Positions 34,412 through 40,134 of a stretch of 64,000 nucleotides of DNA are shown here, piece by piece. Origin of the DNA: Isurus oxyrinchus (Eukaryota). Both the position numbers and the translations under genes were made by a program. Every line of letters starts with the position of its first letter. Position 1 is the first letter of the stretch. Under the pieces are notes generated by a model. It was not told where the DNA came from and searched no databases. It was given only the letters and a program-made list of their open reading frames with translations. The stretch spans positions 744,001 through 808,000 of the forward strand of contig JANJGN010000121.1 of assembly GCA_026770705.1 (NCBI GenBank), in the 5' to 3' direction.

Positions 34412-35133
34412 GTAAGTCTGAAGATTTAACTTGATTTTAATCTAAACATTTGCTTAGGACTAATTGGACAGTTTTTACAAAAGGCCAGCACAGGCACGAT
34501 GGGCTGAGTGGCTTCCTCCTAAGCTGTGAGATTTTAAATTCTTTCATCGAATGTGGCTGTCATTGGCGTGGACAATACTAATTGCCCATTCCCAATTGCC
34601 CCTTGAGAAAGAGGTGGTGAGCTGCCTTCTTGACCCACTACAGTCTATGTGGTGTAGGTACACCCACAGTGTTGTTAGAGAGGGAGTTCCAGGATTTTGA
34701 CCCAGCGACAGTGAAGGAACGGTGATATATTTCCAAGTCAGGATGGTGAGTGACTTGGAGGGGAACTTCCAGGTGGTGGTGTTCCCATGTGTCTGCTGCC
34801 CTTGTCCTTCTAGATGGTAGAGGTCGTGGGTTTGGAAGGTGCTGTTGAAGGAGCCTTGCTGAGTTGCTGCAGTGCATCTTGTAGATGGTACACACACTGC
34901 TTCCACTGTGTGTTCGTGGTGGAGGGAGTGAATGTTTAATGTGGTGGATGGGGTGTTGATCAATCGAGCTGCTTTGTCCTGGATGGTGTCAAGCTTCTTG
35001 ATTCTGTGCTTTGTGCAGAAGTGATTTAAAGAGACAGTCCAGTCGTTGGTGTAAGCTAACAGTGGGCTCTGTGTCTGTGCTGCACTGACTCTCTGCTATA
35101 TGATAACCACAGTGTGATATTGTGTTATTGCAG

Positions 35134-35215
35134 GAGAAAGACAGCGATGGAGGAGAGAGTTTCAGGGACCAGTGACATTGCATTGAGCCCCAGTTCACTC
35201 TCTGTGAAGCACCAG
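35134..35215 (+). CDS. Gene B juxtamembrane cytoplasmic exon, cassette a
   Basis: Acceptor ttattgcag, donor CAG/GTACAG, phase 2-0. Encodes RKTAMEERVSGTSDIALSPSSLSVKHQ, in frame with the TM exon. Confidence 0.82.
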
Positions 35216-35350
35216 GTACAGGAGCTGTTTACACTCACTCCAAAGCTTCAATCTCAGTGTGTAGACAACACGTGTCCCAGATTCCCAGCCCAGTTACCCA
35301 CTGATTTGTACCTGTGGAGTCAGCAATGTTTCAGTATCATGCTGTCTCTC

Positions 35351-36105
35351 TGTTATGACACAGCAACTGGTAAAGACTGTTGTTTAAAATCCCAGAGGGA
35401 AACTTTAAACAACTGTCATAACCTATATTTCCCAGTGGAATGTTTGAGATGCAGCTCTAAATTCAGGAATAAGACCACCAGTTCTCGAGATGGTTTTATA
35501 TCAAACTACATGAGCCATTTATTAATTAACACAAGTTAAACATATGCACATGGCTACAAACTAGTATTATCATAACTTTTTAACAAATTCCCAAACTAAT
35601 CTCCTCTAAGATAACCCATAGAATTTAAGCAGACACCCAGGCAAAGCATTTTCACCTCACAAATTCCAAATGAGGTTCCTTTCACTTTGGTTCCTTTGCA
35701 GACAGGTGTAGGCTTACAGCTGTTTTGATGTTACAAGCCTCTGCTCTGCACACACAAAACTGCTCAAGTTATACCCAGCTCTTCTCTTTGAATGTAAATT
35801 CTAATTGTATCATCAGGACCTTTGAACTCCATCCCTTCAAACAATAAATCCTCTGTCATAGTATCAATTTTATCAATAAAATAAATGTTGATTGGTTTAA
35901 GATTTCACTCTCAGGCGTTGAATGCTCTGTTTAAAAATACAAATTTTTATGCCTCAGTTTACATCTCAAAACTACTATACATCAAATACCCAGACTGGCT
36001 GGCTTTAATCCAATTAAAACACACAGAGACACACCCACAGACTAAACCCCGATGTGAATAAAAATAATTTCCAATAACATGATATTTATTAATCGCATCA
36101 TGACA
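35351..36105. mobile_element. Probable solo LTR (paralog from ~38272)
   Basis: TGTTATGA...TCATGACA imperfect inverted termini; similar fragments elsewhere in the window. Confidence 0.5.
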
Positions 36106-36615
36106 GTCTCTCTCTCTATCCCAACCTCCCTTTCTTTCTCTCTCTCTCTCTTTCTCTCTCTCTCATCCTCTCTCTGATTACAAGGTGCATGTTAATGAGC
36201 TTCACACCAGACACTTGAGTGCAGAATCCAACTGTCACTCACCAGAACCATTACCGAGGGAGTGCAAGACTGACAGAGGGTCAGTACTGAGGGAGTGCTG
36301 CACTGTCGGAGGGTCAGTACTGAGGGCGAGCTGCACTGTCGGAGTGTCAGTACTGAGGGAGCGCTGCACTGTCGGAGGGTCAGTAATGAGGGAGCGCTGC
36401 ACTGTCGGAGGGTCAGTACTGAGGGAGTGCTGCACTGTCGGAGGGTCAGTCCTGAGGGAATGCTGCACTGCCATAGGTGGTATCTTTCATATGACATGAG
36501 AGAGAGGGTTAAGCCAACTGAGACACGACTGACATTAACAAGGCTGCACAATAATTTAACCCTATCAGTGCCAGTAAATGATGTGAGGATATCTTCTGTT
36601 TCGATTTCTCTGTAG

Positions 36616-36864
36616 GTTAAACAGAACGTGCTGATTACTGAGCCCCAGAACACAAAGAGAGACGCAACTGGCGAGGGGGAGACCCCAGCTCCCTGGGGTC
36701 TCTCTGAAGATGCAGTGGGAGGCGATGTTGGACATGGGAACCCTGACAAACCTGAAGAGTTTCTCTACGCCAATCCCCAAGTCTTGAGGATGTCCAGTGG
36801 TGATGGGTCTGTCCACAGGGAAGTGGAGACGGAATACGCACAGATCAGGTTCGAGCATAACTGA
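36616..36864 (+). CDS. Gene B terminal exon, cassette a (FLYANP + ITSM-like TEYAQI)
   Basis: Acceptor tttctctgtag, phase 0. Encodes VKQNVLITEP...EEFLYANPQV...ETEYAQIRFEHN*. AATAAA at 37432-37437. Confidence 0.85.
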   Translation, partial: VKQNVLITEPQNTKRDATGEGETPAPWGLSEDAVGGDVGHGNPDKPEEFLYANPQVLRMSSGDGSVHREVETEYAQIRFEHN

Positions 36865-37061: not shown

Positions 37062-37092
<31 letters not shown>

Positions 37093-38054
37093 CCTCTCTC
37101 TCTCGCTCTCTCCCTCTCTCTCTCTCTCTCTCCCTGTCTCTGTCTTTCTTTCTGTGTCTGTCTCTCATTCCCTATCTCCAGCTCCTCCTTTAAGATGCCC
37201 GTTAATAACTGACTTTGTTGACTCAGCTGTTGGTCTCCTGTCCCTAATATCTCCTCATGTGCCTCAGAGTCAGGTGAAGATGTCACTAACAATCCCCGGA
37301 TGAGCCTTAGGACATTTTGCTACATTGAAGGTGCTATATAAATGCCAGTGGTTGTAGTAACTCTGATCTGCTTCGATTAACAATAGAACCACAAAGGCTC
37401 CTTCGACAGGGGGTGTGTGCAGCAGGGTCACAATAAATACATTGAGCTGTGAGATTTTTAATTCTTTCATCGAATGTGTCTGTCACTGGTGATGTCAGCA
37501 TTAATGCCCATCCCTAATTGCCCTTGAGAAGGTGGTGGGGAGCTGCCTTCTTGACCCGCTGCGGTCCATGTGGTGTAGGTACACCCAAAGTGCTGTTAGA
37601 GAGGGAGTTCCAGGATTTTGACCCAGCGACAGTGAAGGAACGGTGATATATTTCCAAGTCAGGATGGTGAGTGACTTGGAGGGGAACTTCCAGGTGGTGG
37701 TGTTCCCATGTGTCTGCTGCCCTTGTCCTTCTAGATGGTAGAGGTCGTGGGTTTGGAAGGTGCTGTTGAAGGAGCCTTGCTGAGTTGCTGCAGTGCATCT
37801 TGTAGATGGTACACACACTGCTTCCACTGTGTGTTCATGGTGGAGGGAGTGAATGTTTAATGTGGTGGATGGGGTGTCGATCAATCGGGCTGCTTTGTCC
37901 TGGATGGTGTCAAGCTTCTTGATTCTGTGCTTTGTGCAGAAGTGATTTAAAGAGACAGTCCAGTTGTCGGTGTAAGGTTACAGTGGGCTCTGTGTCTGTG
38001 CTACACTGACTCTCTGCTATATGATAACCACAGTGTCATATTGTGTTATCGCAG

Positions 38055-38136
38055 GAGAAAGACAGCGATGGAGGAGAGAGTTTCAGGGACCAGTGACATT
38101 GCATTGACCCCCAGTCCACTCTCTGTGAAACACCAG
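38055..38136 (+). CDS. Gene B juxtamembrane cytoplasmic exon, cassette b
   Basis: Duplicate of 35134-35215 with intact splice sites. Encodes RKTAMEERVSGTSDIALTPSPLSVKHQ. Confidence 0.8.
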
Positions 38137-39695
38137 GTACAGGAGCTGTTTACACTCACTCCAAAGCTTCAATCTCAGTGTGTAGACAACACATGTCACA
38201 GATTCCCAGCCCAGTTACCCACTGATTTGTATCTGTGGAGTCAGCAATGGTTCAGTATCATGCTGTCTCTCTGTTATGACACAGAAACTGGTAAAGGCTG
38301 TTGTTTAAAATCCCAGAGGGAAACTTTAAACAATGTCATAACCTATATTTCCCAGTGGAATGTTTGAGATGCAGCTCTAAATTCAGGAATAAGACCACCA
38401 GTTCTTGAGATGGTTTTATATCAAACTACTTGAGACATATATTAATTTACACAAGTTAAACATATGCACATGGCTACAAACTAGTATTATCATAAATTTT
38501 TAACAAATTCTCAAACTAATCTCCTCTAAGACAACCCATTATCTTTAAGCAGACACCCAGGCAAAGCATTTTCACCTCACAAATTCCAAATGAGGTTCCT
38601 TTCACTTTGGTTCCTTTGCAGACAAGTGTAGGCTTACAGCTGCTTTGCTGTTACAAGCGTCTGCTCTGCACACACAAAACTGCTCAAGTTATACCCAGCT
38701 CTTGAGTGTAAAGAAGACGGAGATTGATGGGCTCTTGATTGGTCAGGGGATCAAAGGTTAGGAGAGAAGGTGGGAGAATGGGGTTTGTGAAACATATCAG
38801 CCATGTATGAATGGTGGAGCAGACTCGATGGACCGAATGGTCTAATTTCTCCTCCTATATCTGATGGTCTTATGGCTTCTGTTTGAAGGTAAATTCACAA
38901 TGTATCATCAGGACCTTTGAACTCCATCTCTTCCAATAATAAATCCCCGTTCATTGTATCAATTTTATTAGTAATATAAACGTTGATTGGTTTAAGATTT
39001 CACTCTCAGACTTTGAATGTTTTATTTAAAAATGCAAATTACCACTTTACCTCTTTGTTTACATCTCAAAACTACTATACATCAAAGCACCCAGACTGGC
39101 TGGCTTTAATCCAATTAAAATACACACAGACACACACACAGACTAAACCTCTGTTTAAAAAGACAGTTTGCATTTATAATACAAACATTAATAGATTAAT
39201 AACACTCTGTCTCTGTCCCTCCTCTCTCCCTCTCTCTCATCCTCTCTCTGATTACAAGGTTCATGTTATTGAGCCTCACACCAGGCACCTGTGTGCAGAT
39301 TCCAAGCCATCACTCACCAGAGCCATTACCGAGGGAGTGCTGCACTGTTGGAGGGTCAGTACTGAGGGAGTGCTGCACTGTTGGAGGGTCAGTACTGAGG
39401 GAGTGCTGCACTGACAGAGGGTCAGTACTGAGGGAGCGCTGTATTGTCGGAGGGTCAGCACTGAGGGAGTGCTGCACTGTCAGAGGGTCAGTATTGAGGG
39501 AGTGCTGCACTGTTGGAGTGTGATAGAGATTAAATTATAAAGAGAGAGAGAAAGCGAGAGAGACAGAGAAAGAGAGTGAAAAAAAGGGTTAAACCCACTG
39601 AGACACGACTGACACTAATGAGGCTGCACAATAATTTAACCCTATCAGTACCAGTAATTGATGTGAGGATATCTTCTGTTTCCATTTCTCTGTAG

Positions 39696-39944
39696 GGTAA
39701 ACAGAACGTGCTGATTACTGAGCCCCGGAACACAACCAGAGACACAACTAGTGAGGGGGAGACCCCAGCTCCCCGGGATCTCTCTGAAGGTCCAGTGGGA
39801 GGCGATGTTGGACATGGGAACCCCGACAATCCCGCCGAGCTTCTCTACGCCAACATCAACTTTTCAAAGCTGCCCAGCGGTGACAGGACTGTGCACAGGA
39901 GCGAGGACACGGAATACGCACAGATCAGGTTCCAGAAAAACTGA
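39696..39944 (+). CDS. Gene B terminal exon, cassette b (ITIM LLYANI + ITSM-like TEYAQI)
   Basis: Acceptor tttctctgtag, phase 0. Encodes GKQNVLITEP...AELLYANINFSKL...DTEYAQIRFQKN*, a typical Siglec two-tyrosine tail. Confidence 0.88.
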   Translation, partial: GKQNVLITEPRNTTRDTTSEGETPAPRDLSEGPVGGDVGHGNPDNPAELLYANINFSKLPSGDRTVHRSEDTEYAQIRFQKN

Positions 39945-40134
39945 GTGTGAAACAGGGAGCGGGGCTGTGGGGTGTGTGCAGCCAACATGGCCAAATAGTA
40001 ATGAACAGAAATATGATGTTGCTCAACTTTTTTTTATTGGTTCTGAGTGAGCTTTCTGAATGCTGCACCTTTTTCCATGCGGTAAAAGATTGTGAGAAGC
40101 TTATGAATTATGTATAATTTAACATCTGTTAATA

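What the first reader, a model, noticed from the sequence alone, without database searches (positions are those of the whole stretch)
34412..40100. Duplicated cytoplasmic cassette offers two alternative signalling tails
Seen: after the single TM exon, the pair [82-nt phase 2-0 exon + terminal exon] occurs twice. Tail a has FLYANP (no hydrophobic Y+3, so not an ITIM) plus TEYAQI, with AATAAA at 37432. Tail b has LLYANI plus TEYAQI. The two 82-nt exons cannot both be included in frame. Established: ITIM is (I/V/L/S)xYxx(L/V/I), ITSM is TxYxx(V/I), pYxN suits Grb2 and pYxxP suits Crk/Nck-type SH2 domains. Inference: alternative last-exon choice tunes inhibitory strength, and combined with three V exons this gives at least 6 possible isoforms from one gene.
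Basis: partly seen in the sequence, partly recalled or inferred. Interest (0 to 1): 0.78.

Follow-up and report, generated by a model that had tools for sequence, protein, structure and literature searches.

The report
Shark Siglec gene with doubled tail
A shark immune-receptor gene of the Siglec type carries its two tail-coding exons twice in a row, and the two copies are most likely read one after the other into one long signalling tail rather than used as two alternative endings.

Summary
The duplication is real. After the TM exon (34315-34411), an 82-nt exon plus a 249-nt terminal exon occurs twice: 35134-35215 with 36616-36864, and 38055-38136 with 39696-39944.

It is in the same phase as the TM-exon donor. 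Exon a can therefore act as a 233-nt internal exon, and 82 + 233 = 315 nt is an in-frame insert of 105 codons.

- One RNA contig of a related shark joins 36848 to the 82-nt acceptor.
- 7 of 24 great white and basking shark Siglec models with a tail carry exactly this serial double tail.
- Three of those seven have the same order as here, YANP-type then YANI-type.
- None of 11 models from non-lamniform sharks is doubled.

Tail b is clearly expressed. I found no evidence that transcripts end at tail a, although its AATAAA is intact. Exon a may be a composite exon, either internal or terminal.

The RNA contigs are short and cannot be told apart between paralogues, so skipping versus inclusion stays open. 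The scan met the same doubled tail on two other pieces of this genome. This is a new variant of a known kind, of moderate interest.

The parts
34315..34411 (+). Transmembrane exon of Siglec gene B. It enters in phase 1 and its donor AAA|GTAAGT leaves in phase 2.
   Evidence: Sequence and translation. An RNA contig covers 34315-34412 with 0 differences, and loose ends show the upstream Ig exon joined at 34315.
34522..36879 (+). Copy 1 of the duplicated segment: part of the TM-82 intron including a repeat element at 34581-35005, exon 82a, an intron with a 33-nt satellite, and exon a.
   Evidence: Self-BLAST and MAFFT identity profile. Repeat copy at 41780-42195 on the minus strand.
35134..35215 (+). 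82-nt exon a, phase 2 to 0, encoding the membrane-proximal stretch.
   Evidence: Splice sites and translation. A TM-to-82 joint is seen in RNA contigs, but the first 53 nt are identical in 82a and 82b, so a and b cannot be told apart there.
36616..36848 (+). Exon a used as a 233-nt internal exon. It carries the YANP motif (no ITIM) and the first ITSM, and ends at the donor CAG|GTTCGA in phase 2.
   Evidence: Donor sequence. GT..AG joint 36848>38055 in run X6. The same junction sits right after the first ITSM in 7 of 7 double-tail models.
36849..36864 (+). Last four codons and the TGA stop of exon a. They are read only if the internal donor is not used.
   Evidence: Translation.
37432..37437 (+). 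AATAAA behind exon a. It is the poly(A) signal inherited from a single-tail gene and now lies inside the a-to-82b intron.
   Evidence: Pattern scan. Copy c has AATAAA at the homologous place, 62687. The a/c homology ends 5-7 nt after the hexamer.
37445..39959 (+). Copy 2 of the duplicated segment, with an extra stretch of about 171 nt at 38704-38875.
38055..38136 (+). 82-nt exon b.
   Evidence: Joints 38136>39696 in X1, X2 and X3.
39696..39944 (+). Terminal exon b, with a canonical ITIM (LLYANI), an ITSM (TEYAQI) and the stop.
   Evidence: Translation. It has the highest contig depth of the region in all 4 runs. The YANI type is the only type in non-lamniform sharks.
39945..40130 (+). Conserved 3'UTR block behind exon b. 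It is shared with gene A (9024-9168) and with DNA downstream of copy c (62785-62934).
   Evidence: RNA contig depth continues to 40100.
61831..62079 (+). Third copy of the terminal exon (c), a mosaic. Its 5' half is b-like. From about 36754 (in a coordinates) onward it is a-like, including the 3' flank.
   Evidence: Breakpoint test: Fisher p 6e-4 for the best split, chosen among the possible splits.

Best explanation
Gene B of this window is an inhibitory Siglec-type receptor gene of a lamniform-like shark. The last two exons of the gene sit twice in tandem.

The upstream 'terminal' exon a has kept a GT donor inside its last codons, at 36848|36849. That donor has the same phase as the TM-exon donor. 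Exon a can therefore splice onto the second 82-nt exon, and the first cassette becomes an in-frame insert of 105 codons.

The main product would then be one long tail with four tyrosine motifs in series:
1. YANP, with the ITIM lost and pYxN / pYxxP-type docking kept;
2. an ITSM;
3. the canonical ITIM, YANI;
4. a second ITSM.

Skipping the first cassette would give the ordinary single ITIM+ITSM tail. Failure to use the weak internal donor, together with the AATAAA at 37432, could give a short tail-a form. In that sense exon a is a composite exon, either internal or terminal.

Shown:
- the duplication, the phases, the donor and the motifs;
- one RNA junction of this kind in a related shark;
- serial double tails in annotated relatives.

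Inferred:
- that this very gene makes the serial form;
- the relative amounts of the three forms;
- the signalling consequences.
For: - **Anatomy and frame:**
- **RNA junction:** one search shows a GT..AG joint 36848>38055 in X6 (1 contig, depth 29, 33 nt on the shorter side).
- **Profile search:** with the three terminal exons as profile, a basking-shark protein matched in two stretches (P0001).
- **Coverage of the double tail:** 4 of 18 hits cover at least 99% of a double tail.
- **Count of models:** over all 39 fetched shark models, 7 of the 24 lamniform models with a tail are double, and all 7 have the junction directly after the first ITSM. None of 11 non-lamniform models is double.
- **Same order as here:** P0018, P0032 and P0033 (great white shark) have an a-type and then a b-type cassette.
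- **Orthology:** window cassette a is sister to the first cassette of P0018, with support 95/96.
- **Conservation:** the first cassettes keep an open frame, the YxNP motif and an invariant ITSM in 7 of 7 models and in the window.
- **Earlier scan note:** another piece of this genome gave the same conclusion (s1-865407). That is a lead, not independent proof.
Against: - The joint 35215>36616 (82a to a), which the serial form needs, is not among the 15 joints shown. A further 19 were not shown.
- The a>82b joint was seen in one run only, in one contig, from a coded organism that may not be the window's species. Its 82-nt side cannot separate 82b from 82a. With at most 1 mismatch allowed it could come from a double-tail paralogue.
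- Joints laid as 35215>39696 (X1, X3) would mean that exon a is skipped.
- Where listed, contigs over exon a differ from the window (for example C for T at 36744 in X1 and X2). They may be allelic or paralogous.
- The gene models are automatic predictions, and I could not see what RNA support they have.
- dN/dS between the copies is about 0.6-2.5 on few sites. So constraint outside the motifs is not shown.
Confidence: 0.55

Rival explanations
1. Cassettes a and b are mutually exclusive alternative last exons. TM-82a-a ends at the AATAAA at 37432, giving a weakly inhibitory tail with YANP plus an ITSM. TM-82b-b or 82a-b gives the full ITIM+ITSM tail.
For: - Exon a keeps an intact stop at the same place as b and c, and an AATAAA at 37432.
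- That AATAAA is homologous to the hexamer behind copy c at 62687.
- P-type terminal exons do end single-tail genes in relatives, for example P0002, P0022 and P0030.
- The internal donor CAG|GTTCGA matches only 6 of the 9 consensus positions. The consensus is recalled.
Against: - No protein model ends on a first cassette: 0 of 7 double-cassette models.
- The 3'UTR of a (bins 37016-37403) has contig depth 0-158. That is at or below the intron bins 35270-35657 (32-753) in 4 of 4 runs. The UTR of b reaches 34-24582. Depth from contigs is a poor measure, and a CT repeat there was skipped.
- The one junction seen leaving exon a is the internal donor.
Confidence: 0.15
2. Cassette a is a decaying or neutral passenger copy that is mostly skipped. 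The gene works through tail b alone. The serial models in relatives are annotation read-throughs or minor forms.
For: - Joints laid as 35215>39696 (X1 depth 7, X3 depth 941) and TM>38055 (X6) fit skipping.
- Exon b has far higher contig depth than exon a in all 4 runs.
- Cassette a has lost the ITIM and carries private changes in its 5' half, 11 sites against 3.
- dN/dS is near 1.
Against: - The skipping joints are not specific. Exons a and b differ in their first 31 nt only at base 2, and great white shark a-orthologues start with the b-like residue. An 82a>a junction of another animal would therefore be laid on b.
- A variant joint with another letter at 39696 fits paralogue P0035, so cross-laying does occur.
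- The P-type first cassettes form one clade (support 100/99). They keep frame, YxNP and ITSM in 7 of 7 models from two species.
Confidence: 0.2
3. The doubling is an assembly artefact, such as two haplotypes or two paralogues stitched in tandem.
For: The region is rich in repeats, there are five runs of N in the window, and the 5' half of the two copies is 95-100% identical.
Against: - No N lies between 29926 and 44188.
- The copies differ by 4-27% depending on the part, and one has an extra stretch of about 171 nt.
- The same a-then-b order is encoded in three great white shark models on two contigs.
- An RNA contig joins an a-type exon to an 82-nt exon.
Confidence: 0.03

Closest known systems
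CEACAM1-L / CEACAM1-S: inclusion or skipping of a small cytoplasmic exon decides whether the ITIM/ITSM tail is made. PMC2490704, search listing and start of abstract only.
   Same: It is an Ig-superfamily inhibitory receptor. Splicing of short cytoplasmic exons behind the TM exon sets how many tyrosine motifs the tail carries.
   Different: In CEACAM1 one exon shifts the frame between a long and a short tail. Here a duplicated two-exon cassette of 315 nt is inserted in frame and adds a second, altered set of motifs.
Composite terminal exons with a competing internal donor and intronic poly(A) site. The classic case is the secreted versus membrane form of the Ig heavy chain (recalled). General treatments: PMC4227790 and PMC5928244, search listings only.
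   Same: Exon a has a donor a few codons before its own stop, and a poly(A) signal in the intron that follows. That is the layout of a composite exon.
   Different: Use of the poly(A) site is not shown here. The layout arose by tandem duplication of the gene's end, not as an old regulated switch.
Mammalian CD33-related Siglecs and CD22: a membrane-proximal ITIM plus a distal ITIM-like/ITSM motif, with CD22 carrying several such motifs (recalled).
   Same: There are V-set (Ig_CD22-like) and C2-set domains, one TM, and a tail with LxYxxI followed 23 residues later by TxYxxI. A serial tail would resemble the multi-motif tail of CD22.
   Different: The extra motifs come from a recent duplication of exons seen only in the two lamniform species sampled. 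The duplicated proximal motif has Pro at Y+3. Orthology to any single mammalian Siglec is not shown, and the names in the shark annotations are automatic.
SIGLEC14/SIGLEC5 fusion by unequal recombination between neighbouring paralogues
   Same: This is a cluster of very similar Siglec paralogues with patchy identity and mosaic copies. Copy c is b-like on one side of a breakpoint and a-like on the other. Recombination between paralogues is therefore a plausible origin of the a+b layout.
   Different: The human event swaps or deletes whole genes. Here the product is two tails behind one gene.

Membership tests
Siglec (sialic-acid-binding Ig-like lectin), inhibitory type | N-terminal V-set Ig domain of the Siglec/CD22 kind | tested here: met
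   Pfam V-set (E 5e-13 to 1e-11) and Ig_CD22 (E 8e-10 to 9e-9) for the V exons at 17493, 21062 and 24547.
Siglec (sialic-acid-binding Ig-like lectin), inhibitory type | Conserved arginine on strand F of the V domain that binds sialic acid | tested here: inconclusive
   The translations of the V exons at 21062 and 24547 have the FFRIEF stretch. The one at 17493 has FFTIKF. The position was judged by eye against the recalled Siglec motif.
Siglec (sialic-acid-binding Ig-like lectin), inhibitory type | C2-set Ig domains, a single TM, and a cytoplasmic ITIM plus a distal ITIM-like/ITSM | tested here: met
   C2-set_2 / Ig_3 / I-set hits for the exons at 25698, 30442 and 32704. Hydrophobic TM exon. 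Tail b has LLYANI and TEYAQI 23 residues apart.
   Tail a has F at Y-2 and P at Y+3. Tail b meets it, with L at Y-2 and I at Y+3.
ITSM, TxYxx(V/I) | T at Y-2 and V/I at Y+3 | tested here: met
   TEYAQI is present in a, b and c. It is invariant in the first cassette of 7 of 7 double-tail models.
Alternative last exons (mutually exclusive 3' ends) | Each terminal exon is used with its own poly(A) site, in separate transcripts | tested here: inconclusive
   A hexamer is present behind a at 37432. No canonical hexamer occurs behind b until 41012. No 3' ends can be seen in contigs (table 6 empty). No model ends on cassette a.
Composite (internal/terminal) exon | A functional donor inside an exon that also has its own stop and a downstream poly(A) signal | tested here: inconclusive
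   Donor use is seen once in RNA contigs of a related animal and in 7 gene models. The stop and the AATAAA are present. Use of the poly(A) site is not shown.

The most novel reading that the evidence does not exclude
In lamniform sharks a duplicated end of a Siglec gene has become a three-way switch. One composite exon decides between three products: a canonical inhibitory tail (first cassette skipped), a doubled four-tyrosine tail (internal donor used), and a short tail without an ITIM that docks Grb2/Crk-type adaptors (intronic poly(A) used). The same ligand-binding receptor could then give graded or even opposite signals in different cells. The design spread through the Siglec cluster by gene duplication and conversion.
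Probability: 0.15. Interest if true: 0.6.

Novelty: new variant of a known kind. Interest (0 to 1): 0.4.

Why it matters
Inhibitory Siglecs set thresholds for immune-cell activation, and the number and kind of tyrosine motifs in the tail decide which phosphatases or adaptors are recruited.

Here a young, lineage-restricted exon duplication appears to have doubled such a tail. It also changed the proximal motif from an ITIM to a YxNP site. That gives a natural experiment on how inhibitory tails evolve and how many motifs they need.

It also matters for annotation. Reading the two cassettes as alternative ends, or stopping at the first stop codon, would give the wrong protein for a whole group of shark Siglec genes.

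The layout is already present, without comment, in automatic annotations of two sharks. I found no paper on it in the held library. Supplementary files, which could hold gene lists, were not open.

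Tried and rejected
**Searches that gave nothing or were closed**
- Word search with terminal exon a alone (82 aa) found no candidate. The tool only sees proteins of 45-143 aa for that query, so the blank says little.
- Pfam has no family for the tails.
I could not read the genomic loci of the great white or basking shark models, so exon borders, donors and poly(A) signals in the relatives were not compared at DNA level.

**Limits of the RNA evidence**
- I first read the RNA joints 35215>39696 and 38136>39696 as proof that exon a is skipped. 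I withdrew that reading for three reasons:
  - the contigs carry only 18-28 nt on the shorter side;
  - exons a and b differ there by one base;
  - a variant joint fits paralogue P0035.
- The TM>82a and TM>82b joints cannot be told apart, because the first 53 nt of the two exons are identical.
- Depth was used only as a weak hint.

**Other points**
- dN/dS on 82 codons has too few sites to decide constraint.
- A simple one-step tandem duplication does not fit. Copy 2 lacks the 565-nt block that follows exon a, while copy c has that block followed by the b-type UTR. I did not resolve the order of events.
- Assembly artefact was rejected (see rivals).
- The species of the window was not identified. 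Run organisms are coded, and the best protein matches are 83-91% identical over individual exons, apart from the short TM exon at 97%.

Full report
**What is in the window**

The window holds a cluster of Siglec-type genes on the + strand.
- Pfam finds V-set and Ig_CD22 domains in the exons at 17493, 21062 and 24547, and C2-type Ig domains at 25698, 30442 and 32704.
- A hydrophobic TM exon lies at 34315-34411.
- The repeat content and the best protein matches point to a shark close to the great white and basking sharks. The species itself was not identified.

**The observation**

Behind the TM exon, an 82-nt exon and a 249-nt terminal exon occur twice: 35134-35215 with 36616-36864, and 38055-38136 with 39696-39944.
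- The splice sites are canonical, and the acceptors of the two terminal exons are nearly identical.
- The 82-nt exons differ at 3 of 82 bases.
- The terminal exons are 84% identical in DNA and 68% in protein.
- The repeat covers 34522-36879 and 37445-39959.
- Identity is uneven: 95-100% in the first 1.2 kb, about 81-90% further on, and 73% in the last 100 coding bases.
- Tail a has FLYANP and TEYAQI. Tail b has LLYANI and TEYAQI.
- AATAAA at 37432 is the only canonical signal behind exon a.

There is a third copy of the terminal exon, c, at 61831-62079.
- It is a mosaic. Up to about position 36754 (in a coordinates) it agrees with b, and after that with a, including 600 nt of 3' flank.
- In the 5' part there are 11 b-like and 3 a-like informative sites. 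In the 3' part there are 5 b-like and 20 a-like. Fisher p is 6e-4 for the best of the possible splits.
- The copies have therefore exchanged sequence.
- Behind c, the a-type flank with AATAAA at the homologous 62687 is followed by the conserved UTR block that lies directly behind b and behind gene A.
- A single clean tandem duplication does not explain this. Recombination or conversion between paralogues is likely, but I did not resolve the steps.

This is the more important point. Exon a contains a GT at 36849, right after the ITSM and 13 nt before the stop.
- From 36616 to 36848 is 233 nt, which leaves two bases of a codon. That is the same phase as the TM-exon donor that normally feeds the 82-nt exon.
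- So 82a + a(233) = 315 nt is an in-frame insert of 105 codons in front of 82b + b.
- I worked this out from exon lengths and the separate translations.

**RNA evidence**

One search for runs and one laying of contigs from four runs were allowed. All runs are Logan contigs labelled only 'RNA?', but they show GT..AG joints at the predicted exon borders, so they contain spliced RNA.

Joints shown:
- TM>82a in X2.
- TM>82b in X6.
- 35215>39696 in X1 and X3.
- 38136>39696 in X1, X2 and X3.
- 36848>38055 in X6. This is the internal donor of exon a joined to the acceptor of the 82-nt exon.

The joint 35215>36616 is not among the 15 shown, and 19 more were not listed.

Exon b and its UTR have the highest depth in every run. 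The stretch between the stop of a and the AATAAA is at or below the intron level.

**Caveats on the RNA evidence**

The contigs are short, with 18-33 nt on the shorter side.
- The first 53 nt of 82a and 82b are identical.
- Exons a and b differ in their first 31 nt only at base 2.
- Great white shark a-type cassettes begin with the b-like residue.
- A joint laid as '82a to b' could therefore be '82a to a' in another animal, or the normal junction of a paralogue.
- A variant joint with a different letter at 39696 fits paralogue P0035, which shows that such cross-laying happens.

So the contigs prove that the internal donor of an a-type exon is used somewhere in this gene group. They cannot tell how this particular gene is spliced.

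**Relatives**

A profile of the three terminal exons, searched against all protein representatives, gave 14 hits. The best, a basking-shark protein, matched twice. Its tail reads TM, 82-nt segment, first cassette ending right after the ITSM, second 82-nt segment, second cassette.

A word search with that tail found 18 proteins, 4 of which cover the whole double tail. Cluster members added more.

Counting all 39 fetched shark models:
- 28 are from the two lamniform species, and 24 of those have a tail motif.
- 7 of the 24 have the serial double tail: P0001 and P0017 from the basking shark, and P0016, P0018, P0031, P0032 and P0033 from the great white shark.
- All 7 have the junction directly after the first ITSM.
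- In all 7 the first cassette has Pro at Y+3. The second has Pro in 4 and Ile in 3.
- P0018, P0032 and P0033 have the window's order, a-type then b-type.
- None of the 11 models from carpet sharks, catsharks, a houndshark and the whale shark is doubled. Every proximal motif that the pattern detected there (8 of the 11 models) has Ile at Y+3.

In a tree of the cassettes, the Pro-type cassettes form one clade (support 100/99). Window cassette a is sister to the first cassette of P0018 (95/96). One truncated row was dropped before the tree, and 3 unrelated repeat proteins (P0009, P0013, P0014) were left out of all counts.

The doubled tail and the Pro variant were thus seen only in the two lamniform species sampled. 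The a+b layout looks older than the split between this species and the great white shark.

These are automatic gene models.

**Most likely working**

The first cassette is an in-frame optional insert.
- If it is included through its internal donor, the tail carries YANP, ITSM, ITIM and ITSM in series.
- If it is skipped, the tail is the ordinary ITIM+ITSM of inhibitory Siglecs.
- If it is included but not spliced, the old stop and the old poly(A) signal could give a short tail with only YANP and an ITSM. Exon a then has the build of a composite exon.

From established knowledge (recalled), a hydrophobic Y+3 is needed for ITIM binding by SHP-1 and SHP-2, pYxN suits Grb2, and pYxxP suits Crk/Nck/Abl-type SH2 domains. 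The first cassette would therefore add an ITSM and an adaptor site, not a second ITIM. These functional steps are inference.

**Comparison, novelty and verdict**

The nearest known systems are:
- the long and short tails of CEACAM1 (PMC2490704, listing and abstract start only);
- composite exons with competing splicing and polyadenylation (PMC4227790 and PMC5928244, listings only);
- the multi-motif tail of CD22 (recalled).

I found no paper on shark Siglec tails in four searches of the held library. Supplements were closed.

The scan had already met the same doubled tail on two other pieces of this genome, and one follow-up reached the same serial-or-skipped reading.

The mechanism is more likely tails in series than a choice between ends. 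It is a new variant of a known kind, of moderate interest.

Noticed in passing
window 51651-51947 and 61831-62079: A V exon 90% identical in protein to basking-shark 'Siglec-13' (P0021) and the intact terminal exon c lie 10 kb apart. tblastn found no C2, TM or 82-nt exon between them, and the interval is full of repeats. Gene C may be a remnant, or its exons may be too diverged or lost.
   Followed up: partly
window 34315, with the exons at 30442-30750 and 32704-33030: Loose ends of RNA contigs in X2 and X3 join the end of the 30442-type Ig exon directly to the TM exon, leaving out the 32704 Ig exon. Relatives such as P0001 and P0028 have that same junction, so it may come from paralogues.
   Followed up: partly
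window 36250-36470, 39324-39520, 61136-61685; also 9500-11400 and 48640-49000: Arrays of a satellite of about 33 nt sit in the intron just upstream of each of the three terminal exons. Large arrays occur elsewhere in the window, partly on the other strand.
   Followed up: no
window 38704-38875: Copy 2 of the duplicated segment has about 171 nt that copy 1 lacks, at the point where identity drops from about 95% to about 85%. It may mark an insertion or the edge of a conversion tract.
   Followed up: no
window 39945-40150, 9024-9168 and 62785-62934: A 3'UTR block of about 150 nt is conserved between tail b, the activating-type gene A and the DNA downstream of copy c. Gene A has AATAAA at its end (9164). 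Tail b has no canonical hexamer until 41012.
   Followed up: partly
proteins P0004, P0005 and P0021: Some relatives have single-residue losses of the tail tyrosines or motifs: Cys for Tyr in the ITIM of a great white shark model, and altered ITSMs in two basking-shark models. Tail motifs in this gene group seem to turn over quickly.
   Followed up: no
window 17810-17875: The first of the three V exons of gene B has Thr where the other two have the Arg of the FFRIEF stretch.
   Followed up: no
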